64,000 nucleotides of DNA, taken from NCBI RefSeq assembly GCF_016433145.1, contig NC_058131.1, forward strand, positions 27,708,992-27,772,991, read 5' to 3'. Source of the stretch: Gracilinanus agilis. Its lineage: Eukaryota. The notes beneath the pieces are model-generated. The model saw only the letters and a list, made by a program, of their open reading frames with translations, searched no databases and was not told the DNA's origin. Shown one piece after another: positions 2,710 through 62,058 of this stretch. Every line of letters begins with the position of its first letter. Within the stretch, counting starts at the first letter, position 1. Position numbers and translations under genes: made by a program.

Positions 2710-2719
2710 ATAGGCAATG

Positions 2720-11426: not shown

Positions 11427-11534
11427 CTTGTTCTGTAGGTGACTGTTAGGGCTCCTCACCATTAGCCCACTTATGGGATCTATCAGTCTCCAAACCTCAT
11501 CTGCTTTATAGTGCTTCAGTTGGAATAAAGCTCC

Positions 11535-11540
11535 TTTATA
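11535..11540 (-). promoter_or_regulatory. TATA box candidate of gene A
   Basis: TATAAA on the minus strand about 110 nt upstream of ATG 11426. Gene B has TATATA (42264-42269) at a similar distance from its ATG. Confidence 0.45.
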
Positions 11541-11648
11541 CCCAAGGGCTTCCTTCCCCTGGTGCTGGATCTGCCAAGACTTGTCCTCCTATCACTGCCA
11601 ATGAATATATCTGTCATCAGGAAGAACCTGCCTCTTCCTGGCATGAGT

Positions 11649-11675
11649 AGAAGTGGAACAGAGCCTGTGGTGAGG
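11649..11675 (-). promoter_or_regulatory. Conserved IRF/ETS + RUNX promoter module, gene A copy
   Basis: Plus-strand AGAAGTGGAACAGAGCCTGTGGTGAGG; 24/27 identical and ungapped versus the gene C copy. Confidence 0.7.
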
Positions 11676-11986
11676 ACCAGAAACCCAGAGTGGAGTGTGT
11701 CACAGTGCCATAGGCACAGCTGGCATTTGTAACTGTTAGTTCAATTAAAGAAATGCTAGATCTGAGCAGGGTGATCCACTCTTAGGGAAGTAGTCCTCGG
11801 TAAATTGGGAGAGACAGTTTTGTCCTTAAAGAGTCTCTGTTCTAATGAGGAATTATAGTCCCTTTCCAAAGTGGTCCTCCATCATAAAAGGGAGACAAAA
11901 AAATCCTCACCTTCCTGAAGCCCCAAATCTGAGGAGTCAGACAATCAGAGAGTCCTCACACTGAAATCATCAAGAATTCTGGATGA

Positions 11987-15458: not shown

Positions 15459-15664
15459 TTTTTAAGGTTATTTAAAAAAATTTTTTTTAAACCCTTAACT
15501 TCTGTGTATTGGCTCCTTGGTGGAAGAGTGGTAAGGGTGGACAATGGGGGTCAAGTGACTTGCCCAGGGTCACCCAGCTGGGAAGTGTCTGAGGCTGGAT
15601 TTGAACCCAGGACCTCCCATCTCTAGGCCTGACTCTCAATCCACTGAGCTGCCCAGCTGCCCCC
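15459..15664 (-). mobile_element. SINE1_Mdo-type SINE
   Basis: Young reverse copy; TSD taatcagctcat. Confidence 0.9.
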
Positions 15665-15978
15665 CTCACACTAATCAGCTCATGACTGAAACATAGGTCA
15701 ACCAGGATTGACTGACTCCTCTTCTTTTCTGAATATTCTGCAAGGAGCTAGAGTGTTGCCTGATTGGTTCCAACAACCATTTGCATTGAACCAAATATAA
15801 ATGGGGCAGGTATCCCTTTTCTTTTGGCTTTGAGTGTTAGAAGAGCATGGCATACAAGTAAAGCAGGGTAATTGGGTTGGAGAGTATGTGATAGGGAATA
15901 AGTTATAGCAAGTCTAGAAAGGTAGGAAGAGGCCAGTATGGAGAGCTTTGAATGTCAATGTACTTTATATTTAATCTT

Positions 15979-16179
15979 TTTTTTTTAAACCCTTACCTTC
16001 CTTCTTGGAGTCAATACTGTGTATTGGATCCAAGGCAGAAGAATGGTAAGAGTAGGCAATGGGGGTCAAGTGACTTGCCCAGGGTTGCACAGCTGGGAAG
16101 TGTTTGAGGCCAAATTTGAACCCAGGACCTCCCCTCTCTAGGCCTGGCTCTCCATCCACTGAGCTACCCAGCTGCCCCC
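15979..16179 (-). mobile_element. Opossum-type SINE
   Basis: Reverse copy; 17-bp TSD actttatatttaatctt. Confidence 0.9.
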
Positions 16180-17215
16180 ACTTTATATTTAATCTTGGAA
16201 GTAACAGGGAATGGCTGGAAGTAGTGGAGTAAGACCTGCACTTTAGAAAGAAACCCTTTGGCTGCTGAATAGAGAATGGATTGGAGTGGGGAGAGACTTA
16301 AAGCAAGGAAGCTATTGCAATACTCCAAGTGCAAAGTAATTAAGACCTTAAATATGTTGGCATCTATGTCAATGGAAGGAAGAAGCTCCACATGAAAGAT
16401 GTTCTGAAGGAAGAAATACAAGAATTGGCAATGGATTAGATGTGGGGGGTGCTGATGAGTGAGTGTGACAAGTCAAAGATGGAGCTCACTTAAAACAGGC
16501 TGACTTAAGTCTGGAGGGTTTACTTATTCTCTAATAACATCAGATCATTTCTTGTATTTACCCAGGTGGTTCTTCCTCTTCCTATGAGGTCTTAGTTTCA
16601 GACCAACTCCCAACCTGTGGGCTAGATCTCCCCCAGAAATCCCCAGATACCTGGTTTTCTTCTCTTCCCTGACCGTGGCTAGCAGTTGGTGTACCACAGA
16701 CAGTGGGGCATAGGGGAATCCCACAGCTCCGTCTTCTGCTATTTTTCTGGCTAGAGAAGTGGGCAGAGTTCCAGAGACCATTGAGACCACTGGACTATAA
16801 GTAGAAGGCATGAATGCAAAGGCCTGGAGATAGGCTTCTGCCCTTTTAGCTGCTTTTCAGAGACTTTCTCCTAACAAAATCCCCAAGTTCCCTCTTCTCC
16901 TATTGGTTAAATCTTGTCTTACTCTACAAGTTCTCAAGACTTCTGCCATCAGCTGTCTCTTCTCAGTCTCTGACACCATGAGCTGTCAGCTTTTCAAACT
17001 GTGGTTGCCAACAGGGAACTGACTTGTCTATAGACCTCAACAGACACTAAAAGGAGAACACCAGGAGCAGCTTCTCCAGGACAGCTCACTTTGGCTGGTT
17101 CACACTGTCCAGGATGGGCGATCATCCTGGGATCTGATGCCTAAAAAGCAAAAGACAGCATGGCATGTGATCCTGAGGGAGACAAAGCCAGGACCCCATT
17201 GAAAGATATTAATGA

Positions 17216-17415
17216 GAGGGCAGCTGGGTAGCTCAGTGGATTGAGAACCAGGCCTAGAGATGGGAGGTCCTGGGTTCAAATCTGACCACAGACACTTCCA
17301 AGCTGTGTGACCCTGGGCAAGTCACTTGACCCCCATTGTCTAGCCCTTACCACTCTTCTGCCTTGGAGCCAATACCCAGTATTAACTCCAAGAAAGAAGG
17401 TAAGGGTTTTAAAAA
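17216..17415 (+). mobile_element. Opossum-type SINE
   Basis: gggcagctgggtagctcagtgg...; TSD aaagatattaatga. Confidence 0.9.
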
Positions 17416-17553
17416 AAAGATATTAATGATGGCAATGCTGGGCAAAGAGCTAGTATTATTAAGAGAGAGGTATAGGCTAAAATGTAGGACATGTCTATTC
17501 CTTGAGAACCCCATGGCCAACAGACCTGCCTGGTGTGATCCAGAACAGGAGAA

Positions 17554-21630: not shown

Positions 21631-22599
21631 TATAAAATTAACTTCTTAAGTAAAAAAACTGTTAATAGCTCTTAATAATTTAATATAATATAAATTTAAA
21701 TATAGCAAAAGAGAGAAATGTAAGAGGGAAGTAAAATTATCTAACTAAAATATCCTAAGTCCTAATCCTAGTGCCTCCAGACTGTGAATGTGAATCTGAA
21801 TGAAAATCTCACCACAATCCAAAATCTGAATTAGGAAGCCAAAATCAAAAGAGTCTGAAGATGCTGAAAAAAACTGCTGAGAATCTTCAGCACATATGGG
21901 ATTAAGACTGCCAAAAATCTCACTCGGGTCCTGATCTCCACTGGAAGTTTGATAACCTCTTCAATATGGGTCTCATCAGTGTAAGCCTCTTCCTTCAGCT
22001 CCAGTCATTCACTCAGAAAGCGGTCAGTGCAGAATCTTGCAGAATCCTCCTCCAGGAGAGTCTACTCACAGAAGAGCCAAGAATGAATGAATCTTCTTTT
22101 ATGTCTCCTTTTATAACCCATTTTCCACTTCAGTTCCTGTTGCTCCCCTATTTCAGGGGAACCAATCACAGTTTCCCAATTTGCCTAGCACTGCCCTGGG
22201 GAGGCAAATAGACAAAGGGAGAGTTAATTCTCTCTTCACAGTTGTCAGAAAGAAGAGGAATCAAAGGTGTTTTCTTTGGTCTCAGAAGATAGAACTAGAA
22301 GTGATTGGTGGAATTTATATGAAGAAAGATTTAAATTCAACATAAGCATTACTTAATGATTAGAGCTATCAAAAACGTAGAAAGGGCTCCATTGTGTAGC
22401 TTGGTGGCACATTGAATAGAGCACTAGGTCTGGAGTCAGAAAGACCTGAGTTCAAATCTGACCCCAGACACTTATTTACTATGTGAACCCAGATAAGTCT
22501 TCCTCCTTCCCTTAGTTGCTTCATTTGTAAAATGAGGATAAAAATAACTCCTGCCTCCCAGAGTTGTTGTGAGGGTCAAAAAATGAGATAATAATTTTA

Positions 22600-30118: not shown

Positions 30119-30295
30119 CTGTGACAGCAAGAAGAAGAGTATAAAGGGAATAAAGTTAATGTGAGTAGAACTCTTCTGGGAATCTTCCCCTATATGTATA
30201 TTCTGAAGGAGATAGAAGAAGAGGAGTGCATTAATAGTATTTCATAGCCAGTTCTTCCTGGGGCTCAGACTAACAAACTCAAGTTTAGCTCTCAC

Positions 30296-30574
30296 CAGGA
30301 TATACTTTTGGTGTTCCCAGCTCAATATGTTCCACTACACAACCGTAATTGGTCACTGTTTCCTCTGGTGGGAGCTCAATGAAGACTCGTTGGTAGAAAG
30401 TGGAATCTGCGTTGGGCAAGAGCCCACTGGAACTCTCCTTCCCAACCACAATTTTCTTCTCCTCTTTCTGCCAGTGCAACAGGATAGAGCTGGGGTAGAA
30501 GCCAGTAGCAGAGCAGGAGAGAGTAGTAATGCCATCCATGGCTTCATGATAGGACACAGTCACGTCAGGGGGCA
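30296..30574 (-). CDS. Gene B alpha3 exon (279 nt)
   Basis: tttag|TG ... G|gtgaga; (V)PPDVTVSYHEAMDGITTLSCSATGFYPSS...LPNADSTFY...YGCVVEHIELGTPKVYP has the Ig C1 Cys pair and the YxCxVxH motif. Confidence 0.96.
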
Positions 30575-31169
30575 CTAAAGGTAGAGGTCAGGAGAGAAGG
30601 CATTATGTGAAAATCTCAGTAGTATTTTTGGTTCCCATTGTCTCTTCTTTTCTTCATTTCCCTTTTTGTTCAATACACAGGGTGAACCTATGGCATGCAT
30701 GCCAGAAAGGACACTCAGAGCCCTCTTGGTGGGCACATGTGCTGTCACCCCAACACAGGATTCACCAGAGTTCATTATTATAAAGCCAGAGGGTTGTGGA
30801 GCTGGGATGCTCCTCTCCCCCTTGCCTGAGAACATTTCTCACATCACCCATCGCTCTAAAAGGTTCACCATCACTGCCCTAGTATTTTACAGGCATAATG
30901 TCTTGGAGGGTAAGGTACTACACGATCCATTTTATACTCTCTCTGTGTCTATTTTATACCTCTCCAGTGTCCTCTGCACACAGAAGACCTTCAACAAATG
31001 GTTGTGAATAGTAACAGCAAAAATATCAACAGATTTCTAACCCAACTAAACTATTGACCATCCTGTCTATTACAACAGGTTAAAAACCAGAACTTCTTCA
31101 ATATTTCCTAGTGTTCATGTCCATGATTTATCCATGTGCTTATACCATTCATTGGTGCAGATCACAGAC

Positions 31170-33110: not shown

Positions 33111-33558
33111 AGGAAGTTATTTCTCTACTTTATAGTCAATTAGTCTTTGTGAGTTGGTGTAGGTCAGTATCATCCTCCTCTCCCCTTTGATGATGAACAT
33201 CTCTACCTTTATCTGCACTAGTTATTAAGAGAAACAAAGACAAATAGTGACAGGGAGATAGAGTCTGTCTTTGAGCCTCAGTTTCCCTAACATGATGGGA
33301 CAAAGCAGAGCTTGTGCTCAGAAGGCACAGATTGAGAATCATGAGGGTTACTTCCACATGCTGATGACACTAAGAGAATGAGTATGATCATACACGATAA
33401 CAATCTCTCTCCTTTCTCTGTCACTGATTTTTTTCCCCATAGTGGTCAGAGCTAAAGCCAGGACCCAGTTCTTTGACTTCCCACACACACCAGAGCATCA
33501 GCCACTAAAGTAACCTCGACATCCTGATGGAAATTGGACAGAAAGACCAGGTACTCAC

Positions 33559-33825
33559 CATTTTTCTTTATACTTGAGTGCTGTAGAATTTTTTTCATGG
33601 TGTTAATACAATATTCTTGCATGTAGTGTTTCCTCTGAGTGGTCCACAGGTTACTTGTCAGCATGGGTTTGAAGGGCTCAGCCTCAGGCACCATGATAAA
33701 CCAATCCCCGTACTCTTCATCCAGCCAGCAAAAATCCTGACCATCCACAGCAATCTGGATTTCATTTCCTAGCAGGTTGTTCCTCTCAAGTTCGCAAAGT
33801 ATGAAGAGTTGCACCGTGCGGTTCA
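33559..33825 (-). CDS. Gene B alpha2 exon (267 nt)
   Basis: tacag|TG ... G|gtgagt; (M)NRTVQLFILCELE...VDGQDFCWLD...LWTTQRKHYMQEYCINTM...KKN. Confidence 0.95.
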
Positions 33826-34868
33826 CTGTAGAGGCAGGTTTGGAGGTGATGGTCGTGAAGTGAGATGTGCATATCTGGTCAGTAGGACCAGGATTTGAAT
33901 CCCAGCTCTGACATTTATTATCAAGATAATCTCAGGAAAATGACTTCACCTCTCTTTCTCAGTATTCTCACTCATCAAATAGAGATGATGTCACTTCCCT
34001 TCCTCTATACAGAATTATTGTGGAGGAAATTATATATTGAAAGCAAGATAGAGATGTGAGTTGCTAGATTGACATCCCAGGGAGGGAGGCATACAAGGAG
34101 GCAGGAAACCTCAAGGTGTCCAATATCATAAAAGATTAACTTTGGGGATCTTTAAGGACAGCCTTTTGATGTAAATTCCTTGAGCTCCTAAAGGGACCAG
34201 GTGCTCCCTACTCATGAAAAGTCATGATCAAGGTAAACTGAAGACATGGAGTTAAGAAAGAATTGAGTAAGAGCTTCATGTCAGTCTGGGTTAGCCAGTT
34301 TTCTATTATATGACTTCCAATCACCTTATCTAAATGTTTTACTTCTGAATTTTGAATATGCCCTTTTTTTACATGAGTAATTTCTAGAACAACCCACAGG
34401 TGGTTGTGAGCATGTGGAGGAGACCCGCTAGAAAGGAGCAGTTGGAAGTAACTGCTTAGATAAGGCCCTGAAATGCAGTCACAGTGACAGAAGAGCACAG
34501 ATGGTGATTTGTTGGTAAGTTTGTACAGCAAATCTCTGAGCACAGAACCAGGAGAGAACAGGGAGAGTTAGTTGCTTCAAGTTGATATTCAATGATTGGG
34601 AAAAATGTAGAGGAAAATGGTAACCCTCAGGATGAAGACCATCTCCCTGGATGCTTGGCACATAGTAGGCTCTTAATAAATGTTTATTGATTGGCCAGTT
34701 CCAAGAGAAGTAGCCAGTGTCCTGGGAAGCTGGTGTTCCTGGTCCTTTCCCTAGAGTGCTCTGAGATCACTCAATAGTATGGCCTCCTGGAAATTGGGCT
34801 CAATGGAGGCAGAGAGAAAGAAGGATGGGGGAAAAAGGCATGGAAGAAGGGAAGAGGAGCTAACTTAC

Positions 34869-35129
34869 TGTCACTCTTGGTATTGTTCTGCATCAACTTC
34901 CTCAAGAACCATAGGAAACTCTTCTCATGGTCCACTAATTTCTGCCAAGTCTCTTCCATGAACTTGGCCCCCAGGACCTGTGAGATCCAGGCCTCCTTGG
35001 CCATGAGCTGATGGTTATATTTGTTAAAGGAGAGCACCTGTACATCATCCAGAAAGTCCACAATAAAGTATTCTGAGAGGGAGCTTCCTGTGCCCACTGC
35101 TGTGAACTGTATCACATGTTTGTGGTGAG
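34869..35129 (-). CDS. Gene B alpha1 exon (261 nt)
   Basis: tgcag|CT ... A|gtaagt; (A)HHKHVIQFTAVG...LDDVQVLSF...AWIS...QNNTKSD. Confidence 0.95.
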
Positions 35130-35464
35130 CTGCAGGACAGGAAGGAATGGGGAGAAAAGAGAAAAGGGGATCAGTATGTGAAGACCCAGAACTCATGTGC
35201 CTTCTCCCACTCATCCCTTCATCCTCCTGCTACTTGGAAGGCAGTTAAGTCTCCCTAGATCACTTAGATCTGAATAGCACAGAATAGAATGAATAGAATA
35301 GCCCCAGTAGATAGTGTGCTGAACGTAGTCAGCCAGACCATGGTTCTAATCCTACCTCAGACACTTACCATCTAATCATACTGGGCAAATCATTTAACCT
35401 CTGTGTTGACCCATCTATAAAATGAAGAAATCAGACTTGAAAGGTTCCAAAGGTTCCTTCCAGC

Positions 35465-40310: not shown

Positions 40311-42061
40311 CTTAAACCAGTCACTTTACCTCTTGGGGTGTCTGTTTCCTCACCTGAAAAAGGAGGAAGTTGAACTAAATAACTCCAAATCCTTTCAAAC
40401 TCTAAATATAAGACCATGATCCTAAGATCCTAGGCAGGTCTCTGGTCTACCTACAAAAAAAAAATAGAGTTGCTTCTTTCTCATGGGAATTTCTAATTTT
40501 TCTCATTGGTAGGGCTGCTCCTGTCAGTTGTTTCTATAAACCAAAGATCAGTGGGGACATCTTTAAGTCATCAATGTCTGTAAAAAATACCTTCTACATT
40601 GTAGTCAGCAGTGACTAGCCTCTAAATGTTAAGAGACCCAGAACTTCCTTAATCTGCCTCACCTTTCCTGTTTATATCCCAACTTCAAAGGTTCTAGGAC
40701 TATCAAAGGTTCCAGGACTCCCAACACAAATGCAGCCAACCAATTCATCCCTGGCTTATTCAATGTCTAGGGGAAGCTTTTCCTTCATGTTCTTTTTGAT
40801 CATTAATCATCATTATCATTGCCATCATTTCAATCTTCTCAGTCTTTTCAATGAGATTCAGATAGAAATGATCCTAGAACAAGTCCCTAGCTGGCTGACA
40901 TTCTTGTTTATTTAATATGCTGGAAACTATTGCAAACATGGATAAACTAATTGCAAAACATGGATTAAAAATAAAATTTAAAAACTTATTTTGATGTAAA
41001 CTCATCCAATGTAGACTTACTTAAAGCAGTCTGAGTACAGGGTGAGTAGCAGATGGGACAATAGAGGTGACATGCATTTCATCCTGTTGGTGGTGCTATT
41101 AGCACGAGCAGAAGTGGCAATAGTCATAATAATACTTAGAGTCACACTTGGAGTCAGGAGGAACTAGGTTCAAGTTCTGTCTCTGACATATGACTGTATG
41201 ACACTGCGTAAGTCATTTAACCTTTCAGGCAACAACTTAGTTTCAAGGAGCTCTCAGGAGATCTAGAGTGATGAAATGGAATGTCTAGAATAATAATAAC
41301 AGTCACTGGCAAATATTTCTAGGGTGCTTTAAAGATTGAAAAAGGCTTTACCTGCATCATCTCCTTTGAACCTTTCCCACAACCCAATGGCAAAGATACA
41401 AGTTGAAAACTGGAGATGCTCTCATTTGGAAAAGGAATGGCTGACTGAATACAAGGTGAATCAAACAAACAAAAAATAAATTAAATAAAAATTATTTTTC
41501 ATGAAATTCCAAGTGGGCATTCAGTGAACTGTGGGCCCTATCAGTGATGTCTCTTGTTTCTCCTCCCTTTTTAAAAATCTTGTCAAAGTTGATTAACTTT
41601 TCATTCTTCATCACTCCTCTCACTCATTTGACAGCCTGGAAGTCTCCATCCTGCCATCTTCTCCAGATAATAGCTTAAGTCTGTTTTTTTGGAGGCGCTT
41701 AACTTCACTCCCATCCCTCTCTTCCTTACATTGCCCTCGTAGCCTCAGTTCCTGCTTAGCCCTAATCCTTTTCAATTCTTGGACATGGACATAAAGTAGA
41801 TCAGTATTCACTCTCTCGGGTCAAACCTCATTTTTTCCTGGAAGATTTTCCTGAACTTCTACTTGGTTAAGTGGAAGAGAAGTAACCCAGCAGAATCATC
41901 CCCTGTCCTTATGGTTCTAGTCATAACGCTCTTGTTAGTCTGCCTATTTAAATGTCTACTGTCAATAGCAGGATTATTCCAGGGTAGGGTCCGAATGTTC
42001 CCTCTCAGATCCAAACCACATTGCCTTCCATCCTTCCCCCCACTTGCTTCCCTAGACTCAC

Positions 42062-42155
42062 CTGCCTGGATCCTCATTACAGAAAGTACCCCCATAAAGA
42101 GCAGCAAGGATGACAAAGACCCCCTCTTTCTTTTCCTTCTCCTTTGGCTGGCCAT
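42062..42155 (-). CDS. Gene B leader exon
   Basis: MASQRRRKRKRGSLSSLLLFMGVLSVMRIQA then G|gtgagt (phase 1). Flanks are homologous to the gene A leader region. In-frame upstream ATG at 42182; the ORF-track start at 42188 is TTG. Confidence 0.85.
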
Positions 42156-42400
42156 CCCATTCCACAGGTGACTGCCTGGCATCTGCAATCACACTCTTGG
42201 TGGTAGAGGTTTCACCTTCCAAACTCTGAACCCCGGTGGTGTCCAAAAGAGAAACAAGGTCTCTATATAAACCTTGGCTCTTTACCGCTCATCTCCAGCC
42301 TAGTTTGGATTGTCCCTGCCCAGGACTAGCCCTCCTATCATTTCTGGCTGAGATATCTGTTGCTAGGCAGAAGCTGAGCATATCTGGAAGCCTTGAGAGT

Positions 42401-42427
42401 AGAAATGAAATGAAGTCTGTGGTGAAG
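42401..42427 (-). promoter_or_regulatory. Conserved IRF/ETS + RUNX promoter module, gene B copy
   Basis: Plus-strand AGAAATGAAATGAAGTCTGTGGTGAAG; 21/27 identical and ungapped versus the gene C copy. Confidence 0.6.
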
Positions 42428-43473
42428 ACAGGAAATTCTAGAGTGGAGTCACCATCAGGTGTCACTGAGAAATATGGGTGACACATATGGCATTTGTAGT
42501 GTTTGAATTTAGAAAGTACTATGTCTCATAATGGACACAAAGATGCACTCTAGAGGACTTTAATTCTGAAAACATGGACTCCTTTGTGTGTGTGTTTGTG
42601 TATGTGTGTGTGTGTGTTTCTTATTTTACATCTAACAGGGCTTAGACATTCTCATTTTCCCCACAGGCAGAGAACCTCAGTGACAAACCAATTCAAGCTT
42701 TTCCTGACCAAGAATCCCTTCTGCACCATCCTCAACAAATGAAGACATCTAATGATACCATCTGATGCTTCCTGCTTTCTGTGATGTGTTATTCCATTGG
42801 GGGATTCCTCTAGTTATTAATAAACTTTTTTTCCTTTCCCTGGAATGAAGTCTGTCTCTGCAATTTTCAATCACTGATCTTAGCTTATCCTTTCTGGGGA
42901 ACACAAGAATAATTCCTCTGATCAAATTTACTTGTGTTCTTTCTCGCTGTCTAGGATTCATAACAGATCATTGATTTAGAGAAGGAAGGGACTAGTGGAC
43001 TTATTTAGTCCATCTCTCTTATTTTACATTTGAGGAAATTGAGGCTTTTCCCAAGCTCATAGTGATAGCTGATGGTAAAGTCAAGATTTGAACTCAGGCC
43101 CTTTGATTGCAACTCCAGTGCTGTTTTCACTACACCACACTGCTCTCTGCAGCAAAACTCCTTCTTCACCCTTAGATCTTTTTCTAGGATAAAATAAGGT
43201 TGGGGTGGGGTTCTCAAAATTAAAATTCTTAGTTGTTACAATTAGTCAGCATCACCACCACCCCTCACTGAAGGCTTTAAGCAAAGGTGTGCCAAAGACA
43301 TTGTAGAAGGCTCTCTAATCCAGGTAGACTAGTTGACTTCTGCCATCTTATCCAACTCAATAAGGCCGTGTGATTCAGTAAAGTTTTCTCTTCCTCCAAA
43401 TGCCATATTATCTTGGTCTCTGTGGTCACTTTAATCTTCTCTATCTTTTCCATCAAAGAGAACCCCAATGCTT

Positions 43474-51846: not shown

Positions 51847-52993
51847 GGGACAGCTGGGTGGCTCAGTGGATGGAGAGCCAGGACCAGAGATGGGAGGTTC
51901 TAGGTTCAAATCTAGGTTCAAATGACTTCAGACACTTCCTAGGTGTGTGACCCTGGGCAAGTCACTTAACCCCTGCTGCCTAGCCCTTACCACTCTTATG
52001 CCTTAGAACCAATATTCATAATAATATGGAAATAGGTCTTGATCAATGACAAAAATAAAACCCAGTGGAATTGCTCATTGGCTGTGGGAGGGGCTGGGAA
52101 GAGGGGAAGGAAAGAACATGAATCATGTAACTGTTGTGAGGATTACTTAGTTATTAGCTTAGTATTAGTATTAGACCTAGCAGGAAGGGCTGGAGAATTC
52201 CAAAATGGAATGAAGAAGCAGGAAGTGTCTACTTGCTGACTGAGAGAGACTCCATGGTGGTTGAGACAGGTTGCAACTGATCCTAGGAGACCTCAGTTTA
52301 CCAGAGATCCCGAAGGAAGACCGTCACCTACTTGTGGGAGATTTTGGTAGAGACTATTAATCCTAACCTGAGTTGCAGGTCAACTTGGGCTGGGTCAGCT
52401 CCCAGAATCTACCCACCTGGAAGAGTGCAGCAGGTGGTCCTGGAGGAGCAGAAACACCACTGGAGTGAGGCTGGACACTACTGAGAGGATGTCCACTTCA
52501 GTCTTTGCTAGTCTCTGGGCTCTGTCTTGCTTAGGTCTCAGTTAGTGTAGATAAGTCCCTTCCCTGACCCTGGGTTTGCCCTTAGTCTGAAGAGTGTGGT
52601 AACCCCTATTCCCATCCTTTATCTTAGTTGTCCCTGATTAAAAGTGTTAAACTCTTGCCTTTACTCGCTGGTTTCCATAGGTCTAGTCTAGATACTGCAG
52701 AGTGGCAGTTGGGCCCAACTGCTACTTCAGTAGCAGTCACCTCCTTGGCAGTAAAACCTGGTCTCCCAACTTTGTTTGATCCTGTCCATCTGTCATTCCT
52801 GCCTCCCTCACCCCATTGTGAACCCACAGATAATTTTAGTTAACTTCCCTGGTAATCCTCCATTACATAACCATGGAAAAATATTGCAAATTAATTAATT
52901 AAATAAAAATTAAAAAAAAAAAGAACCAATATTCACTATTGATTCTAAGAAGGAAGGTAAGGGTTTTAAAAAATAAATTAAAAAAATAAAAAT
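51847..52993 (+). mobile_element. Three-layer nest: SINE containing an L1 3' fragment containing a solo LTR (52132-52867)
   Basis: SINE TSD aacactcattgc/aagactcactgc; L1 TSD agaaccaatattca (52005-52018, 52922-52935); LTR TGT...ACA with 4-bp TSD taac. Confidence 0.9.
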
Positions 52994-55812
52994 AAGACTC
53001 ACTGCATGCTAGGCAAAAGACACATAAGGAAAAGAAGTTGAGGAAATTATAGCACTGACCATTCGGCAGTCTGATAAAACCTACAAATTCCTTTTCAGAA
53101 TCATGTTTTAAAAAAATTAAATAAAATAAGTAAAAATAATATTAGAGACCAGGTAGATGACTGGTAGAGGTTCAATAAATAGGGGTTAGAAAGAAAATGA
53201 ATTACACTGAAATAGAGTCATTTAAAAAATTTAGACAAATCTCTTAATCCCATGTTATGAACTCTTATTCTAGGACCATTTTTAGACTGAAAGATGACTT
53301 TCAGTACCATCTGAACTTACCCCAAGACATCATGTTCTTGTTGTAGGATTCTAAGGCCTGGCTGAGGTTCAATATAAGGAACTCATTTTTCCTAGTCATC
53401 ATCCTCCTCCTCCTCATGATCATCAAGGATATTTAAGTTTGCAAAGTACTTTATAAAAATTATCTCATCCTTTCCTCCTGTGAGGTAGGGGTTATTATTA
53501 TGCCTGTTTTGCAAATGAGTTAACTGAGGCAGATAAGTTAAGGAATTCACTCAGTTTTAGATACTCGATAATGGCAATTTTCAATTCAGATCTTTCTTAT
53601 TTTAAGTCCACTTTTCTGATCAACCTACCCATTCCTGTTCTACCCATCAAAGGAATAGCTGACCTTCAACAGGTGTTTCAGTCAAGCGGCACATAGTGTA
53701 TTCTCTGAACTTTCCCCAACCTCAGAGATTCCAAAGCTCAGACAAATAAGCAATCTGGTTCTCTCACAAATACGTTTTGCCTACAGTTATAGGCTCTTGT
53801 AAGAAGAAAGACAGCCTCTATATGTTTCCATGTGCTCATTCTGTGCATTCTTCCCCAGCAGAACATAAGCTCCTGGAGGGCAGGGACTATTTCCCTTCTG
53901 TCTTTGTAGGACTGTCACATAATAGTGCTTGATAAATACTTGTTGATTGAGAGAACACAGACAATGAAGCATCTGTGGGATTATTGCAATTGCCATTATG
54001 GGCACACATTGAAAAAAGGTACTTATTGACTTGCCAAAGGTAGTTTCTGTTTGAGCAATCATGTCATCTTTCAGCGCAGTAAATAATGAAAACTATAATT
54101 TTTAAAAATGTTGACCCTATTGGAAGGATTTTCCTTTTTTTTAAGGTCTTGTTGATAAATATTTATCAATCAACTCTCAAAAAATATGTACAGTTTCCAG
54201 TTTCATCTGCACTTTTAACCTTTTCTCCATCAACTTGTTAAGTCTAGACAACCTAAAAAAAATCAAGTCCTGCTTTGTGTGTACCAGTTTTAGAGATGTA
54301 AAGTTAGGAGCCTAGTCCAATAATTATGTGGGAAGAGACAAGAATTTGAAGAAAGGAGATTGAAGTAGGTGATTGAGGGAAAAGCCTGGAAGCAAGAGAT
54401 ATTGTGTACGTAGAAGGAGTAGGTATCTGTCATCTAATTGGCTATATGAGGAAAGAAGAATATAAGACTCTAAATTATAAGCCTTTCAGACTGAAAAGAT
54501 GAGAATCAATGGATAAACTCTTATCACTGCTGTTCGGTCATGTCATCTATTTTTGACTCTCCACAACCCAATTTGAGATTTTCTTGGCAGAGATATTGGA
54601 GTACTTGGTCATTTCCTTCTCTAGTTTGTTTTCAAGATGAGGAAACCGAGGCCAGCAGGAGCTAATTGACTTACCCAGGATCAGATTTGACCAGAGTCTG
54701 ATGCCAGATGTGAACTCAGCAAAAAGAGTCTTCCTAGTAGGAGTATGAATCATGTAACCATGTTAAAAATGAATATTAATAAATGTTTAAATTAAAAAAA
54801 AGGAGTCTTCCTGACATCAGGTCTGGCATTTCTCCATCTTGCCACCTAGCTGCCATACTATGTGTCAGGCATTCATCTAAATGCTGGAAATTAGGGAAAG
54901 AGGCAAGGAATGCTTTGGGGGAAAGGTTAATTAAGACTTCACTTTAAGGCAGAGTGAAGTTTTGTTCATGGTGGGACAAATGGAGAAATTTCCACAAGGG
55001 AGTCGTGAATAGAGGACTTTGAGCTCTGGGAAATTGAATGTATAGCCAAGACTTCCAGGGTCACATACATGAGACTGATAACTGAAGCCCAGGGATAAAG
55101 GTAAGTTAACACTTTCCAGAACCAGTGCCCTTAGGTCCAAATCCCAGGGAAGGGAATAGACTCAGACTCAGCGATGAACAAGGGTGTTACACCTCCCAGT
55201 CATAATGATAATGATAAAAGCCAGACACACAGATGGTGAGCCTACAAACACTGCAACATGCCACCCAGGATTCAGTGTCCTGGTCCTGGCAGTCATCCAG
55301 GGGCCACATTGGGAGGAGATAATAATTAATCAGCATGGAAAGGCAATGTGGAATAGGATCAAGAATATCAACAGACTTAACGCTAGTATGACTTCTCTTT
55401 GAATTCTTCCTTAGACTTTTGCTAGTTTCACCCTAGAAAAGTACTTTAATCTCTCTTGGACTCAGTTTCCTTGTCTGAAAAATGAGGATGGATAATAGTG
55501 CCTGCTTCTGCCCCACAGGATTATTGTGACAAACAAGTGAGATAATAATAAATGGAAAGTCCTTTGCTTACCTTAGAAGGGTGTATTCACTGTTATTATT
55601 ATTATTAAGGGCATATTTTTAAACATGTATCTCCATTTAAACCTGCCCCATAAAATCAGGGGGTCCCTGAGAGCAGGATAAAAGGAGCAATGGGGCCTCT
55701 TCCTATTTCTCCCTTCAGAATGAAATCTCCCTTCAGATAGAACAATGTCTAGGTTCAACTAACACTTAGGAATGACAACTGGGTGGTTGGCTCTGAAACA
55801 ACCAGTCCATCT

Positions 55813-55822
55813 GGGGCTTCCC
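55813..55822 (+). promoter_or_regulatory. NF-kB consensus site in the gene C promoter
   Basis: GGGGCTTCCC fits GGGRNNYYCC, 40 nt upstream of the conserved module. A second kB-like GGCACTTTCC (55853-55862) abuts the module. Confidence 0.4.
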
Positions 55823-55862
55823 AGAAAGTACCTGATGATGACTGTGCTCTGAGGCACTTTCC

Positions 55863-55889
55863 CCTCACCACAGACTCTGTTTCACTTCC
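55863..55889 (+). promoter_or_regulatory. Conserved RUNX + ETS-IRF (EICE/ISRE-like) promoter module, gene C copy
   Basis: CCTCACCACAGACTCTGTTTCACTTCC. The reverse complement contains GGAAGTGAAA (ETS-IRF composite) and TGTGGT (RUNX). About 190 nt upstream of ATG 56080. Confidence 0.72.
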
Positions 55890-56079
55890 TCTCTTATGTC
55901 TGCTGAGCAGGGAACGTTTCAGCCTGGTAACAGGCATCTTAGATGACATTGAGAAGAGGGCAGGGTCTAAGCAGAGCCAACCCCATCCTGGGTAGGGTTA
56001 GAGGATGAAAAGCCATATTTAATACACAGGAGACCTCAGTTCCCTTTTAGGTACTGCCTGAGGCTGTTTGGTGTGCTTG

Positions 56080-56194
56080 ATGAAGCCAGGTAGCCCCCTT
56101 CTGAGGTCCACTGGATGTCAGAGGAGCTGGAGATGGTTCTTTTCAGCTGGGCTTCTCATTCTGGAAGTATTTGCTCTGAGAAAGACACAGGCAG
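56080..56194 (+). CDS. Gene C leader exon
   Basis: Not in the ORF track. MKPGSPLLRSTGCQRSWRWFFSAGLLILEVFALRKTQA then G|gtaagt; 115 nt = 38 codons + 1, phase 1. Confidence 0.85.
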
Positions 56195-56299
56195 GTAAGT
56201 GTAGAGAGAAGGGGGTTCAGTAGACAGTGTAGAGACAATGGAGCTTTTGGTCTGATGGGGAAAACTTATTCATTGCCTTTAAAAGGTTTGAGGTAAGGC

Positions 56300-57130
56300 A
56301 GTCAGTCAACAAACATTTATTGAGTATATTTGTTGATTAATTCATTATTAAGCATATTAAACATAATTATTGTTATACTCCAGTAAAAATGCTAGGTACT
56401 GGGGATACCACCACCACCAAAAATAAAATAAACAGAAAGAACATAGTCCCTGCCTAAAAGGAGCTCATGCTCTAAGAGGGAGAGAACATGTAAATTCAAA
56501 AATAACTAGATACATCTAAGGGAGATGAAAAATAATGGAAAACTAACAATTGTTATCCGTGATGGAATGTTTGATGTGAAATATGGTAAATGGGCTAATT
56601 TGACTGAAATGTTAAATGCATGAAGGAGAGGACTAGGAATATAGCCTAGAAAGGAAGACTGGAATCAGAATGTGAATGACTTTAAACACCATTAGCTGCC
56701 AAAGTTTGTATTTCATCATAGAAGAAGTAGGGAACCACTAAAGTCTTTTGGAGATGGAGTGTGGTGTGCTTTGGGAATAGAAAATGGGAAGATTGGGGAG
56801 GACCGATTGAAGAAGGAGAATTCAAAAGAAAGAAACTCATTTAGAAGGAGATTGCCAAGATCCTGGCAAGAGGGAATAAGGGCCTGAACTATGGTGGGGG
56901 ATGTGTGAATGGAGAGAAAGAAAGAAAGATGTGAGAGAGGAGCTGGAGGCAGAATTAGCTGGGCTTGGCTGCTGGTCCGATATTGAGGAAGGACAGAGAG
57001 AGGGAAGATCTGAGAATGGATCTGAGATTACAAACTTGGATGATGAGAATATTAGGGCTATTCTTGGCAAAAATAGAAAGTAAGTGAGAAGCATGGGTTT
57101 ACAGAGAAATGAATGACAACGTTTTTGACA
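56300..57130 (-). mobile_element. L2 fragments in gene C intron 1
   Basis: cagtcaacaaacatttattgag... L2 3' signature and a purine-rich body. Confidence 0.65.
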
Positions 57131-57625
57131 TACTGAGTTTCAAATACGGAAAGATAATCTAATTGAAGAGGTCTGAAAGGAAAGAGTTTTTTAATAAACA
57201 TTTATTAATCCTCTATTATTCAGTAGGTACTGTAATAAATCCCTTATAAATGCCTCCTTTGAGTACCAATAAAACAATAAGCATTCAGTGTCTTTACTAT
57301 TTTCATTTTATGGATAATGAAATTCAGGTTTAAAGAGTTTAAGATCATACAGCTTAAATGTCTGAAGCTAGATTTGAACTCAAGTCTTTCTAATTACAAG
57401 CCCAGCACTCTATCCTCTGAACCAACTAGCTGATGATAGTTGGAGCTCAAAAGAAAGAGACTATGAGTTGGATATGTACATTTTGGAGTCACCTGTTCAG
57501 TGACATTTAATAATAGTAGGAGACAGAGAAAGGGCAAAGAAATGGCTGAGAGGAGGCTCTGGTCCTCTGGTATCCCCAAACCTGAAACATCATCTTCTCT
57601 TCTTCTCTTCCTTTCTATAATTCAG

Positions 57626-57889
57626 CCCACCACAGGCATATGATTCAGTTGACCGCAGTGGGTACAGGCTACTCTGTCTTGGAACTAAGTGCAATTAGCC
57701 TCATAGATGATGTTGAAGTGGTGTTTTATAACAAAGCACAGAAGCAAATTGCTATCAAGATACCCTGGGTCTCCAAACTAGTGGGAATTAATTATCTCAC
57801 ACAGCTACATGATTTATTGGTGAGCCATGAGCAACATTTCCACTGGACATTCCAATTCTTACTACTACGGAATAACACTAACCCAGACA
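57626..57889 (+). CDS. Gene C alpha1 exon (264 nt)
   Basis: ttcag|CC ... A|gtaagt; (A)HHRHMIQLTAVG...IDDVEVVFY...PWVS...RNNTNPD. Confidence 0.95.
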
Positions 57890-58732
57890 GTAAGTCAGGT
57901 TTCCCCTCATCCTGTTTTTCATTATTTTGTCTGTTTGTCTCCCAAGCCCAGCAGATCCATGGATCCCCAGTAGGTCATACCACTGAGACAAATTTCTTTG
58001 GGCCCTGTCCACTGTATATACTTCCCTGGAGAAAGAACTATCAAGGATCCAGCCCTGGGCCTTAGGCTTCACCCAGTTGGATTAACATCCAGGATCACCA
58101 TCTCCTATAATCCTTTTAAGAGATTTCTACCTTCTGCCCAGCGACTTTCACTCCATGCCAAAATTTCTTAATCAATAAACCTGAACTCATAGAATAAGTC
58201 CCATGCTCTCCTTCAGTCCCAGAGCTTAGAAATGTGCTACAGTCCATCCTAGTTACTGATCTCTCTCTTCATCTGGATTTCAGACATTAGTTCTAGCACC
58301 AACTCCTTTCATTATCTTTTACTCCTGCAATTACCCACAACAGACACACTAAGTAATTTCTGGGTTTTGTTTAAAAGGAAAGAAAATACTCAAACTCAGA
58401 TACAAATTGTCCATAGAGCTTTGAGAGCAAAAAAGTGCACTAAGAATTTGGGGATGCACTGCATAACATGATAGTTCAAGCTGTATGGAGTAGAAATGAG
58501 CATAGCCCCAGAATGAAGAGAACCTAACTCCTAAGTTATTCTATGGTACCTGAATTTCCTGTGATTCTCTAGAGACAGTCCAACTTGATTGTGAGCCACA
58601 AGCTATAAGTAGCTCCCAATGTTTTTAAAAAAGGAAAATCCTTTTCATACATCTCCCCCAAAAATGGGCTCCTCCTTTGGGTTCCCTGTCCTCTTTCCAC
58701 CCATAAAAACCCAACTCTGTGTTCCTCCACAG

Positions 58733-58999
58733 GAAACCACACAGCCCAGCTCCTGGGAGAATGTGAAGTGGACAATGACATCACAGTAAAGAGTCATGCC
58801 CATTTAATTTGGGGTGGGAAGGAAAGTTACCGGATAGATGAAGAGGTTGGGCATTGGGAGAACATAGATCCTGATGTCAAACGATACCAACATGTTCTGG
58901 AGAGACCTTTATGGACCAATCTAAGGAAACGCTACATGAAGCTATTTTGTGTTGACATAATGAGGAAAATCGTTGAATATTCAAGCATAAGGGATAATG
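58733..58999 (+). CDS. Gene C alpha2 exon (267 nt)
   Basis: cacag|GA ... G|gtgagt; (R)NHTAQLLGECEVD...HW...LWTNLRKRYMKLFCVDIM...RDN. Confidence 0.95.
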
Positions 59000-59149
59000 G
59001 TGAGTGTTAACTTCTTCCCATCTCCTCCTTAAAGGTCTAGGTTACCTCCGCAATCCTTTTCAGTCCCAGAGAAAGAGACTGCAACCCCACCTTCTGATCA
59101 TAGACCCAGCTGACAATGGGAAATTTTGTTTTAATGTGAAAAAGTTTGC

Positions 59150-59405
59150 ATTAAGTTCTTTTTTCCTTCTTTTCTTTTTCTTCCTTTCTTATTTTCTTTT
59201 TTCTTTTCCATATTTCCTTCCTTCTCTCTATTTTCATCTATCCTTTTTTCCTTTCTTTTTTCTCTACTTTCTTTTCTTTTTACTTCTTTTTTTCTGTTAT
59301 TTAAGTCCTTTCTTTCCTTCCTTTCTTTTCTCCTTCCTTACCTTTTCTTTTCTTTCTCCTTTCTTTCTCTCTTCCATTCTCTTCTTCTTTACTTTTTCTA
59401 TTCTT
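59150..59405. repeat. Polypyrimidine low-complexity tract (about 250 bp) in gene C intron 3
   Basis: Nearly all C/T (ttc/cttt runs); explains the spurious Phe-rich ORF 59004-59408. Confidence 0.9.
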
Positions 59406-60024
59406 TAAGTTAAAGTCTCACCCCCATGACTTATCAAAGGTAGAGGGTAATCCTAGGAGCTAAGAAATCATGGCAGCAAAATACATATTCTGAAATGATC
59501 TCCCAAAGCTGAGAAATCTTTGTTCACAGTACCAGGGATGATGAACTATGTATTTGCTGTGTAAAGAGCTGTCTAGCCAAATTTGAAACATTAGGATGCC
59601 GGCCACAAGTAATATTTTACTTTTATTTGGGGAGGTAGTGACAGAGATACATGAAGGATAGCCTAGTAAGAATGGTGGGTATTCAATCTTAATGATCAGT
59701 AGTATCCCCACTGATTCAATCATGGGTCATAGAAGACTAAGCTTCTTGAAGATGGTTTAGAAAGCTATTGGTGATAAGTTTGTCAAAACCAACTGATGGT
59801 GACTCAGTAACTAGCCGTTAACTTAGCACTCTTTCGGGTGTCCAGAAAGATACATAGGAATAAAAAGTACTCTCAAGGACCTGATGGATCCATTGGGTAC
59901 AAGAGCACAGGAGATGCTGCAATAAGGAAGCTGAGAGCATTCATGAAGTTAAAGATAAAATGGAAGCATCAAACACTGACTAAGATTGTGACATGAGACC
60001 TTCTTCCTTGATCTCTCCTCCTAG

Positions 60025-60303
60025 TGGCCCCAGAGGTGGTTGTATCTCAACATGTCAGCCCAGAAGGCAGCATCATTCTCTCCTGCATTGCCACAGGTTT
60101 CTACCCTCGCTCCATCATCATGCACTGGGAAAAGAATGGGAAGCTGGGGATATGGGGAAATGAGAGTTCCAGTGGCACCCTGCCCAATATGGATTCCACC
60201 TTCTACCTCAAAGTTACCTTAGAACTCCCACCAGAGGACTCAGGTGCAGGTTATACCTGCGTAATAGAACATAGTGAGCTGAAGAGTCCTGCTATGTATT
60301 CAG
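60025..60303 (+). CDS. Gene C alpha3 exon (279 nt)
   Basis: cctag|TG ... G|gtcagt; (V)APEVVVSQH...LSCIATGFYPRS...LPNMDSTFY...YTCVIEHSELKSPAMYS. Confidence 0.96.
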
Positions 60304-60425
60304 GTCAGTGTTTTAGCCACATACTCTCATTACATCCCTAAGAAACTTAGCCCCAGAGTTCCATTCTCTCCCCACTTCTTTCATTGAATGCACACTCACT
60401 TACATTCTACTCTTTATTTCTATAG

Positions 60426-60542
60426 TCCCTAGAAAAACCACTAAAAACAAGCCTTGGATTCTTGCACTGGGCATCATGTTAGCTGTCATGATACTGCTGA
60501 GCTGTGCTGGGGTATTCATCAAATGGAAGATGAGGAAGACAG
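60426..60542 (+). CDS. Gene C transmembrane exon (117 nt)
   Basis: Not in the ORF track. tatag|TC ... G|gtatgc; (V)PRKTTKNKPWILALGIMLAVMILLSCAGVFIKWKMRKT. Confidence 0.92.
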
Positions 60543-61277
60543 GTATGCATGTAAGAAGAGAGAAGTGACAGGAAGATTTTGGATTGGGAGCACCCAAGGA
60601 GACAGGAGATATTGGTATCATAGCAACCTCAATAACTAATTGTAAGAAAATGTTTTGAGAATAGAATCCCAGAATCTTAGGGTCAAAGAAGTACACAAAT
60701 TTTATAAAATCCAAACTTTACCCAATCAAAAAGCTCCTCAATATCATCCTGGCAAGACAATCTCCAATCCTCAGACATCTTATCTGTAATAGGGGGATAT
60801 CAATGGCACTTGCATTACAATAATATTCACATAAAGTGCCAGTCAAATCTTTAAGTGCTATGGAAATATTGGTAATCATTATGACTCAAATAATACAGTT
60901 AGAGACCACTTTTTTAAAACTGTCATGCCATGTCCAAGGCACATTCCTGATTTCTATGAAGTTTTCAGTCCATTAAAATACCCAGGTCTTTATTATTACA
61001 GAAAATATTTTATTGGTGTGTGCATGTATGCATTTATATAACTATAGTATTTAAATTTTATATAAATTTCAATCTAATTCAATGCAATCCAAAAAGAATT
61101 TGTCAAGGACCTATTAGTGTCTTGCTAGACTCCTTTAAGACAAAGACAAAAGGAAAATAGTCCCTGCTCTCATAGAGCTTACATTCTATTGGGGTAACTC
61201 CTATCAAATTTCATCATCTTAAATTCTGCCCATTGTTCTACCCTTTAAAAATCTTTTGAGATCCTGCCTCATCAACT

Positions 61278-61469
61278 GTTTTTTTTTAATTTTAAACCCT
61301 TAACTTCTGTGTATTGACTTATAGGTGGAAGATTGGTAAGGGTAGGCAATGGGGGTCAAGTGACTTGCCCAGGGTCACACAGCTGGGAAGTGTCTGAGGC
61401 CAGATTTGAACCTAGGACCTCCTGTCTCTAGGCCTGGCTCTCAATCCACTGAGCTACCCAGCTGCCCCC
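61278..61469 (-). mobile_element. SINE1_Mdo-type SINE
   Basis: Young reverse copy; flanks actgttttttttt. Confidence 0.9.
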
Positions 61470-62058
61470 TCCACTGTTTTTTTTTAATATTTTTGATGAC
61501 ATTAGCTATCCCTCCAGTATTGGAAACATCTCCAAATTAGATGTTAATGTCATCTATGGCTTCATCCAAGCCATCAAAAACATGGTACCTCTTAGTGAAG
61601 AAGCTTCTCTTGCTAGACACTCGGAAATCAGTCAATTGTGTCTTTCAACTCATTAGAATAAATATTTATTAAATACTTGCTATGCTCAAATTAATAGATA
61701 GCATGGTTTATAGAATAGAGACTCTGTCCTGAAGTTAGGAAGACCTGGATTCATGTCTCACGTACTGGCTGTGTCACACAGACCTTGAACAAGTCACACA
61801 CAGAGCCTCAGGTAACTCTCTAAGACTAAATTATAGAAAGTGCAAATCTTCACTGATAGAGGGAGTTCCTCAGTTGGATTTCCCTATACCCATGATGGCA
61901 CCTGTTGAGACTCTCAAAAAAAGACAGAGGGGGAAGGATTATATACCTTAATAACATTTAGTAGAATCATGTCAATTAATGAAGTTCAGCTCACTGCCTT
62001 CTATGAAGAATCCATCATCTTCCCTTAAAAAAATGTTCACTCACTCATCTATTTCCAG

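What the first reader, a model, noticed from the sequence alone, without database searches (positions are those of the whole stretch)
55863..55889. Ungapped 27-nt ETS-IRF + RUNX promoter module shared by all three paralogs
Read in the same orientation relative to each gene, the copies are A agaagtggaacagagcctgtggtgagg (11649-11675), B agaaatgaaatgaagtctgtggtgaag (42401-42427) and C ggaagtgaaacagagtctgtggtgagg (reverse complement of 55863-55889). A/C are 24/27 and B/C 21/27 identical, with fixed spacing, about 190-250 nt upstream of each ATG, although the proteins are far more divergent. The left half resembles the HLA ISRE (AGAAGTGAAACT); in C it is a perfect PU.1-IRF EICE (GGAAGTGAAA). The right half is an invariant RUNX site (TGTGGT). 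I found no conserved SXY module. Inference: a family-specific regulatory cassette driving haematopoietic/APC or interferon-responsive expression, distinct from the NLRC5-SXY logic of classical class I.
Basis: partly seen in the sequence, partly recalled or inferred. Interest (0 to 1): 0.75.

Follow-up and report, generated by a model that had tools for sequence, protein, structure and literature searches.

The report
Conserved IRF/RUNX-like promoter block of UT genes
A 27-base stretch about 190-220 bases upstream of three marsupial MHC class I-like (UT) genes is a real, strongly conserved promoter element: one half is the interferon-response site of ordinary class I genes, the other a marsupial-only RUNX-like site.

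Summary
The three 27-mers lie at the stated coordinates and share 20-24 of 27 bases. They sit 187, 219 and 191 nt upstream of the first in-frame ATG of each leader exon. They are the best-conserved 27-nt stretch of a ~450-bp promoter-plus-exon-1 segment.

The window is Gracilinanus agilis, not Monodelphis. Gene C matches an annotated NCBI protein exactly, exon by exon.

The block recurs, ungapped, in five more UT promoters from Tasmanian devil and Dromiciops (27/27 and 26/27 in gene C's lineage). No other copy was found in 64 kb of window or 311 kb of fetched loci, so these data give no sign of a dispersed repeat.

In gene sense it reads ACCACA, seven bases, then TTTCACTTC. The second part is the class I ISRE, in the classical orientation and about 110-130 nt upstream of a TATA box. 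Its core also stands in three monotreme UT promoters. ACCACA is invariant in 8 of 8 marsupial promoters and absent in monotremes.

A perfect ETS-IRF site occurs in only 3 of 8, so that reading does not hold for the family. An S-like and X1-like remnant follows the ISRE, but X2 and Y are missing.

Verdict: a derived class I promoter with a conserved added RUNX-like site. Factor binding and the transcription start are untested.

The parts
55863..55889 (+). 27-nt block of gene C in gene sense: RUNX-like core ACCACA (55867-55872), a 7-nt spacer, then the ISRE core (10-mer at 55879-55888)
   Evidence: Identical 27/27 and 26/27 in two Dromiciops promoters.
11649..11675 (-). 27-nt block of gene A (gene sense is the minus strand)
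42401..42427 (-). 27-nt block of gene B (gene sense is the minus strand)
55831..55854 (+). Second footprint: 24 nt just upstream of the block, invariant between gene C and both Dromiciops L008 promoters and partly shared by B and the devil promoter
55923..55935 (+). X1-like box of gene C, with RFX half-site GGTAAC, 33 nt downstream of the block
42355..42367 (-). X1-like box of gene B, with half-site AGCAAC
11609..11621 (-). Degenerate X1-like box of gene A, preceded by the S-like CAGGTTCTTCC
56016..56026 (+). TATA-like element of gene C, followed by a strongly conserved core-promoter stretch
11535..11540 (-). TATAAA of gene A, 109 nt downstream of the block
42264..42269 (-). TATATA of gene B, 132 nt downstream of the block
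56080..56194 (+). Leader (signal-peptide) exon of gene C; phase-1 donor CAG|GTAAGT
   Evidence: exact match to residues 1-38 of P0149
11342..11462 (-). Leader exon of gene A (second in-frame ATG at 11426); donor CAG|GTGAGT; intron 1 about 6.6 kb
42062..42182 (-). Leader exon of gene B (second in-frame ATG at 42156); donor CAG|GTGAGT; intron 1 about 6.9 kb
55709..56269 (+). Paralogous promoter plus exon-1 segment of gene C (counterparts: A 11282-11790, B 41998-42526)

Best explanation
The block is the distal core of the proximal promoter of UT-family MHC class I-like genes. It lies upstream of a leader exon that is spliced to the alpha1 exon across an intron of 1.4 to about 7 kb. In gene sense it has two parts at fixed spacing. 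The 3' part (TTTCACTTC and variants) is the class I interferon-stimulated response element. It has the orientation it has in classical class I promoters, sits about 110-130 nt upstream of a TATA box, and is followed by S-like and X1-like remnants. It was probably inherited from the ancestral class I promoter and most likely binds IRF proteins. The 5' part (ACCACA) stands where classical promoters carry Enhancer A and its linker. It is fixed in marsupial UT genes only and most likely binds RUNX-CBFbeta. That would fit the thymocyte and skin expression published for opossum UT genes. Shown here: the position, orientation, spacing and conservation. Inferred: which factors bind, where transcription starts, and the effect on expression.
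For: Position. Signal-peptide exons with a conserved phase-1 donor lie 187-219 nt downstream of each block. They match the N-termini of annotated and cDNA-derived UT proteins. Gene C's model equals P0149 exactly.

Conservation. The block is the top window among the three paralogs and among six promoters of three species (Fisher 2e-5). It is present ungapped at L004:9772-9798, L001:1761-1787(-), L007:9582-9608, L008:9725-9751 and L008:21872-21898. In gene C's lineage it is 27/27 and 26/27 against a 71-73% background. A matrix scan found no other copy in the window or the loci. ACCACA is invariant in the six-promoter alignment and in all eight marsupial rows.

ISRE. The 10-mer core of gene C is identical to the H2-K ISRE in the construct primers of PMC4374748. 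The core TTTCNCTTC is invariant or nearly so in all 11 marsupial and monotreme UT promoters.

Architecture. The S-like, X1-like and TATA elements follow in the classical order. Marsupial classical class I promoters carry Enhancer A, ISRE, SXY, CAAT and TATA within 200 bp of the ATG (PMC2719672, PMC3414760).

Expression. UT genes are transcribed mostly in thymus and skin, and UT8 in alpha-beta thymocytes (PMC5101759).
Against: The ISRE half departs from consensus in several promoters: B has GAAA repeats 5 nt apart, the devil copy reads GAGA, and L001rev has lost the 3' end. In 6 of 8 promoters the RUNX core is followed by G, which is off the TGYGGTY consensus as I recall it. Homology with classical promoters rests on order, orientation, spacing and by-eye comparison with one published mouse sequence. 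No marsupial classical promoter could be fetched for a formal alignment. The Dromiciops ortholog of gene A keeps exon 1 at 77% identity but has no block in place, so the element can be lost.
Confidence: 0.6

Rival explanations
1. One reading: a UT-specific composite of an ETS-IRF element (PU.1 with IRF4 or IRF8) and a RUNX site. It arose independently of class I promoter logic and drives antigen-presenting-cell or interferon-responsive expression.
For: A perfect GGAAGTGAAA stands in gene C, L007 and L008b. The devil copy keeps a strong ETS core. The RUNX core is invariant in marsupials. X2 and Y boxes are absent.
Against: The GGAA core is lost in A, B, L001rev and L008a, so 5 of 8 lack a perfect EICE. 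The IRF part has the sequence, orientation and position of the class I ISRE and is shared with monotreme UT promoters that lack the RUNX core. S-like and X1-like boxes follow it. Published expression is in thymocytes and skin, not typical PU.1/IRF8 cells.
Confidence: 0.2
2. The ACCACA half is not a RUNX site. It is either the conserved linker between Enhancer A and the ISRE of the ancestral class I promoter, or the site of another factor. One candidate is a SMAD-type CAGAC element, which overlaps ACCACA by its last two bases in 5 of 8 promoters.
For: H2-K reads CCACAG directly before its ISRE, one base off the UT motif. Six of eight cores have an off-consensus flank. CAGAC follows in B, C, L007, L008a and L008b.
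Against: Monotreme UT promoters have neither ACCACA nor CCACAG at that place. The hexamer is the most strictly conserved part of the block, which argues for direct recognition. In UT genes, 6 more bases separate the motif from the ISRE core than in H2-K.
Confidence: 0.12
3. The similarity comes from gene conversion, recent duplication or a transposable element, not from selection on a regulatory site. Alternatively, the block is transcribed and acts in the 5' leader.
For: The paralogs are neighbours in a tandem and inverted array. The transcription start is not measured.
Against: The flanks of the block are only ~50-60% identical, and introns do not align at all. Conversion would homogenise longer tracts. 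The paralog lineages predate the split of American and Australasian marsupials (orthologs at 58-73%), yet the block is kept across species. No extra copies exist in 64 kb of window plus 311 kb of loci. TATA boxes lie downstream of the block in every promoter.
Confidence: 0.06

Closest known systems
Classical MHC class I proximal promoter (Enhancer A, ISRE, S-X1-X2-Y, CAAT, TATA), e.g. mouse H2-K, Modo-UA, Saha-UA/UB/UC
   Same: An ISRE with the same core sequence and the same orientation, upstream of TATA and within about 200-250 nt of the ATG. It is followed by an S-like CAGGTTCT and an X1-like RFX half-site in the same order. The leader exon ends in phase 1.
   Different: No conserved NF-kappaB Enhancer A; an invariant ACCACA stands there in marsupials. 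The X2 (CRE-like) and Y (ATTGG) boxes are absent or displaced, so the NLRC5/CIITA enhanceosome platform is incomplete. CCAAT occurs in only 2 of 8. Intron 1 is 1-7 kb rather than about 0.1-0.2 kb (the classical figure is from memory).
Marsupial non-classical class I UK promoters (SAHA-UK, Modo-UK, Maeu-UK)
   Same: An ISRE is present but no complete SXY module. In devil tumour cells SAHA-UK is induced by IFN-gamma but not by NLRC5 (bioRxiv 10.1101/2020.09.06.274720). This is the behaviour I predict for UT genes.
   Different: A different class I lineage. No RUNX-like partner is reported for it. Its ISRE is 127 bp from the ATG. UT genes have not been tested for interferon induction.
ETS-IRF composite element (EICE, GGAANNGAAA) of PU.1 with IRF4/IRF8 targets
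   Same: Gene C, L007 and L008b carry a perfect match.
   Different: Not conserved across the family (3 of 8). The conserved letters are those of the IRF/ISRE part, not the ETS core.
RUNX (core-binding factor) sites of T-lineage enhancers and promoters
   Same: A TGTGGT core that is invariant over at least four paralog lineages and three marsupial species, in genes transcribed in thymocytes.
   Different: The flanking base is off consensus in 6 of 8. No adjacent conserved ETS site at the short spacing typical of ETS-RUNX composites (recalled, not tested). Absent in monotreme UT promoters.

Membership tests
Classical class I promoter | ISRE in gene-sense orientation upstream of SXY and TATA, within ~200 bp of the start codon | tested here: met
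   The core 10-mer is identical to the H2-K ISRE text. It lies 109-132 nt upstream of TATA and 187-219 nt from the ATG. The core is kept in 11/11 UT promoters.
Classical class I promoter | Enhancer A (NF-kappaB site) just upstream of the ISRE | tested here: not met
   A kappaB-like 10-mer stands only in gene C and is not kept in its Dromiciops relatives. Judged by eye against the consensus from memory.
Classical class I promoter | S box upstream of X | tested here: inconclusive
   CAGGTTCT in A and the devil copy resembles the H2-K S box in PMC4374748 by eye. Only TTC and one T are invariant across six promoters.
Classical class I promoter | X1 box (RFX half-site RGYAAC) | tested here: inconclusive
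   Present in B, C, the devil copy, L007 and L008a; broken in A, L001rev and L008b. Read by eye.
Classical class I promoter | X2 box (CRE-like) abutting X1, and Y box (ATTGG) 20-22 bp from X | tested here: not met
   No CRE-like half-site next to X1. ATTGG occurs only in gene A and abuts the X region instead of lying 20-22 bp away. The spacing rule is from PMC4374748.
ISRE / IRF site | Binding of IRF1/2/8 or ISGF3 and interferon inducibility | not testable with these tools
   Sequence match only.
EICE (ETS-IRF composite) | GGAA, two bases, GAAA, conserved in the family | tested here: not met
   Perfect in 3 of 8 marsupial promoters.
RUNX site | TGTGGT core | tested here: met
   Invariant in 8/8 marsupial promoters. 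Absent in 3/3 monotreme promoters.
RUNX site | Consensus flank (pyrimidine or A after TGTGGT) and RUNX-CBFbeta binding | tested here: inconclusive
   The flank is A in the devil copy and L007 and G in the other six. The consensus is from memory. Binding is not testable here.
Dispersed repeat / transposable element | Many copies away from UT leader exons | tested here: not met
   The matrix scan finds the block only at UT promoters in the window and the eight loci. Self-comparison shows no other copy. A whole-genome scan was not possible.

The most novel reading that the evidence does not exclude
After marsupials split from monotremes, an ancient class I lineage swapped the NF-kappaB Enhancer A of its promoter for a RUNX site placed 7 bases from the retained ISRE core. 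This would create a RUNX-IRF composite switch. That switch has since been held fixed in many diverged paralogs and gives UT genes their thymocyte and skin expression. It would be a named, testable cis-code for candidate ligands of marsupial unconventional T cells.
Probability: 0.3. Interest if true: 0.6.

Novelty: new variant of a known kind. Interest (0 to 1): 0.45.

Why it matters
UT genes are a class I family found only in marsupials and monotremes. Their function is unknown and they are expressed mainly in thymus and skin. Neither UT paper that I searched mentions promoter, ISRE, SXY or enhancer, so this appears to be the first description of their promoter. The ISRE survives, the X2 and Y parts of the NLRC5/CIITA platform are gone, and an invariant RUNX-like site has been added. 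That gives concrete predictions: UT genes should be interferon- or IRF-responsive, NLRC5-independent, and T-lineage restricted. It also shows how a class I promoter was rewired when a lineage left classical antigen presentation. The element is short, defined and easy to mutate in reporters.

Tried and rejected
- **RNA and DNA read evidence.** No run ids means no read laying, so the transcription start and expression are untested.
- **Naming the genes with published ModoUT primers.** The step is left out.
- **Word search with the alpha1 exon of gene B.** It came back blank. This is uninformative, because full-length relatives lie outside the tool's length window. I then used the representative search on an alignment of the three alpha2 exons, by reference.
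- **No spliced model was joined.** Exons were searched and mapped one at a time.
- **DNA that could not be fetched.** Trichosurus, Vombatus and Monodelphis loci were not retrievable because the files are too large. P0001 is not on record.
- **Fish loci.** L005 and L006 turned out to be fish class I loci and are irrelevant to the promoter.
- **Enhancer A remnant.** A kappaB-like site upstream of the block in gene C was considered and rejected, because it is not conserved in Dromiciops.
- **Small promoter inversion in the Dromiciops ortholog of gene A.** The local alignment scores 16 against a shuffle mean of 11 and maximum of 17. The only signal is a 14-nt exact match, so this is left unexplained.
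- **No marsupial classical class I promoter could be fetched.** The comparison with classical promoters is by eye against the H2-K and H2-Eb primer text of PMC4374748, plus published descriptions.
- **Supplement search for UT genes in devil interferon data.** No files are held.

Full report
**What is in the window.** Three MHC class I-like genes are present.
- Gene A is on the minus strand: alpha3 5-227, alpha2 about 3317-3616, alpha1 about 4342-4713.
- Gene B is on the minus strand: alpha3 30285-30575, alpha2 33452-33826, alpha1 34774-35214.
- Gene C is on the plus strand: alpha1 57625-57888, alpha2 58735-58998, alpha3 60024-60302.

Pfam gives MHC_I and C1-set for the exons. Gene C's five coding exons match P0149 exactly, exon by exon. 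P0149 is a 355-residue NCBI protein of Gracilinanus agilis named 'zinc-alpha-2-glycoprotein-like'. The window is therefore from the agile gracile opossum, not Monodelphis.

Relatives found with a profile of the three alpha2 exons are marsupial and monotreme proteins with the same NCBI label, plus a cDNA-derived Monodelphis 'MHC class I antigen'. This fits the UT family of PMC4509613 and PMC5101759.

**The observation.** Identities are A/C 24, B/C 21 and A/B 20 of 27. Each lies in a 400-500-bp segment that aligns among the three loci at about 59-60%. Apart from the alpha3 exons and SINE-like repeats, nothing else in the three loci aligns.

Each segment contains a signal-peptide exon. This exon ends in a conserved phase-1 donor, CAG|GTRAGT. 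Its translation matches the N-termini of annotated and cDNA-derived UT proteins. For gene C it is exon 1 of P0149.

The blocks lie 187, 219 and 191 nt upstream of the first in-frame ATG. Intron 1 is about 6.6-6.9 kb in A and B and 1.4 kb in C. Annotated relatives have introns of 1-5 kb. The block is the best-conserved 27-column window of the paralog alignment, at 0.80, ahead of the exon-1 donor region at 0.77. The proteins share only 34-39% identity in alpha1 and alpha2.

**Orientation.** The orientation is therefore consistent, but antisense to transcription. In gene sense the block reads CCTC-ACCACA-GACTCTG-TTTCACTTC-C.

**Conservation in other species.** I fetched UT loci of Dromiciops (L001, L007, L008), Tasmanian devil (L004), platypus (L002) and echidna (L003).
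- The block recurs ungapped at L004:9772-9798, L001:1761-1787 (minus strand, a head-to-head neighbour), L007:9582-9608, L008:9725-9751 and L008:21872-21898.
- Every copy lies upstream of a leader exon.
- In gene C's lineage the two Dromiciops copies are 26/27 and 27/27 identical, while the surrounding ~550 bp are 71-73% identical.
- Across six promoters the block is the top window: 0.756 against a median of 0.517, with 12/27 invariant columns against 28/278 outside (Fisher p = 2e-5).
- ACCACA is invariant in all eight marsupial promoters, and so is the spacing.
- A position matrix built from the instances finds no other site in the 64-kb window or in 311 kb of fetched loci. Within these data nothing points to a dispersed repeat.
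- The paralog lineages are old. Genes A, B and C each have closer relatives in Australasian or Microbiotherian species than in their own window.

**The ISRE half.** The 10-mer GTTTCACTTC of gene C is identical to the ISRE at the start of the mouse H2-K SXY construct primers printed in PMC4374748. L008a, L008b and one platypus promoter carry the same 10-mer. The other promoters differ at 1-3 positions.

Three monotreme UT promoters keep an ISRE about 330 nt upstream of the ATG. When all 11 promoters are aligned, the columns of TTTCNCTTC are invariant or nearly so. Monotremes have no ACCACA and a linker 2 nt shorter.

Motif matches alone mean little, since the window holds 6 such 10-mers against 6.8 expected. 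The argument rests on position and conservation.

**Architecture downstream of the block**.
- About 27-33 nt downstream comes CAGGTTCT. By eye this resembles the H2-K S box.
- Next comes an X1-like box with an RFX half-site RGYAAC, present in 5 of 8 promoters.
- Next comes a conserved TGATAGGAGGGC-type stretch.
- A CCAAT occurs in 2 of 8 promoters.
- A TATA box lies 109-132 nt from the block in A, B and C.
- No CRE-like X2 abuts X1, and no ATTGG lies 20-22 bp from X. That is the spacing NLRC5- and CIITA-bound modules require.

Marsupial classical class I promoters carry Enhancer A, ISRE, S-X-Y, CAAT and TATA within 200 bp of the ATG. The devil non-classical SAHA-UK has an ISRE without SXY. It responds to IFN-gamma but not to NLRC5.

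**Interpretation.** The UT promoter looks like a derived class I promoter. The ISRE is retained in place, the S and X1 boxes are partly retained, and X2 and Y are lost. In marsupials a fixed ACCACA stands where Enhancer A and its linker lie in classical genes.

The hexamer is the RUNX core. Its flank is off the consensus I recall in 6 of 8 promoters, so binding is plausible but unproven. It fits published UT expression in thymus and skin, including UT8 in alpha-beta thymocytes.

The ETS-IRF reading fails as a family feature, because only 3 of 8 promoters have a perfect match. H2-K reads CCACAG directly before its ISRE. The hexamer may therefore descend from the classical linker, although monotreme UT promoters do not show it.

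**Limits.**
- There are no read data, so the transcription start, expression and inducibility are inferred.
- No marsupial classical promoter could be fetched for a formal alignment.
- The S, X1, RUNX-flank and kappaB judgements are by eye.
- The Dromiciops ortholog of gene A keeps exon 1 at 77% identity but lacks the block in place.
- A second devil leader at L004:25346-25477 has lost its donor and its promoter.

The element can therefore be lost.

**Novelty.** Neither UT paper contains the words promoter, ISRE, SXY or enhancer, and a literature search found no UT promoter analysis. The parts are known kinds of site. What appears new is the combination and its strict conservation in this family.

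Noticed in passing
window 56080-60565: The window is Gracilinanus agilis, not Monodelphis. Protein P0149 (NCBI 'zinc-alpha-2-glycoprotein-like') maps exactly onto five exons of gene C. NCBI labels UT genes variously as zinc-alpha-2-glycoprotein-like, MR1-like, HFE homolog or H-2 class I-like.
   Followed up: yes
window 55831-55854: A second perfect footprint of 24 nt lies just upstream of the block. It is invariant between gene C and two Dromiciops promoters and partly shared by gene B and the devil promoter. No factor is assigned.
   Followed up: partly
L001:9500-10010: The Dromiciops ortholog of gene A keeps exon 1 (77% identity), but homology stops just upstream of the coding exon and the block is missing. 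The only trace is a 14-nt exact match to the block's flank in inverted orientation near 9770. The alignment score is within the shuffle range. Possibly promoter turnover or a small rearrangement.
   Followed up: partly
L004:25346-25477: A decayed UT leader exon downstream of the devil gene. The splice donor is lost and no promoter homology remains, so this is probably a pseudogene remnant.
   Followed up: partly
L008:10001-33707: The annotated Dromiciops model P0124 joins a leader at 10001 to an alpha1 exon 14.4 kb away. It skips a second complete promoter and leader at 21740-22304, so the model is probably a chimera of two genes.
   Followed up: no
L005, L006 (fish loci): The profile of UT alpha2 domains scores multi-gene class I models of catfish, sturgeon and other fishes (E down to 1e-28) above any tetrapod classical class I. 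This may hint at a deep link between UT and a fish class I lineage.
   Followed up: no
window 55869-55874 and equivalents: CAGAC, a SMAD-type element by memory, overlaps the RUNX-like core by two bases in 5 of 8 promoters. The RUNX-SMAD pairing known from TGF-beta-responsive promoters is a lead only.
   Followed up: no
window 55943-55961, 42327-42340, 11587-11599: A conserved TGATAGGAGGGC-type stretch lies between the X1-like box and TATA. It is GATA-like in A, B and L007, and sits roughly where classical promoters have the Y box.
   Followed up: no
window 2700-2900, 9108-9310, 15226-16200, 17214-17420, 51847-52015, 61290-61487 and others: A SINE-like repeat of about 150-200 bp has at least a dozen copies at 70-94% identity. 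It is unrelated to the promoter block.
   Followed up: no
   Followed up: no
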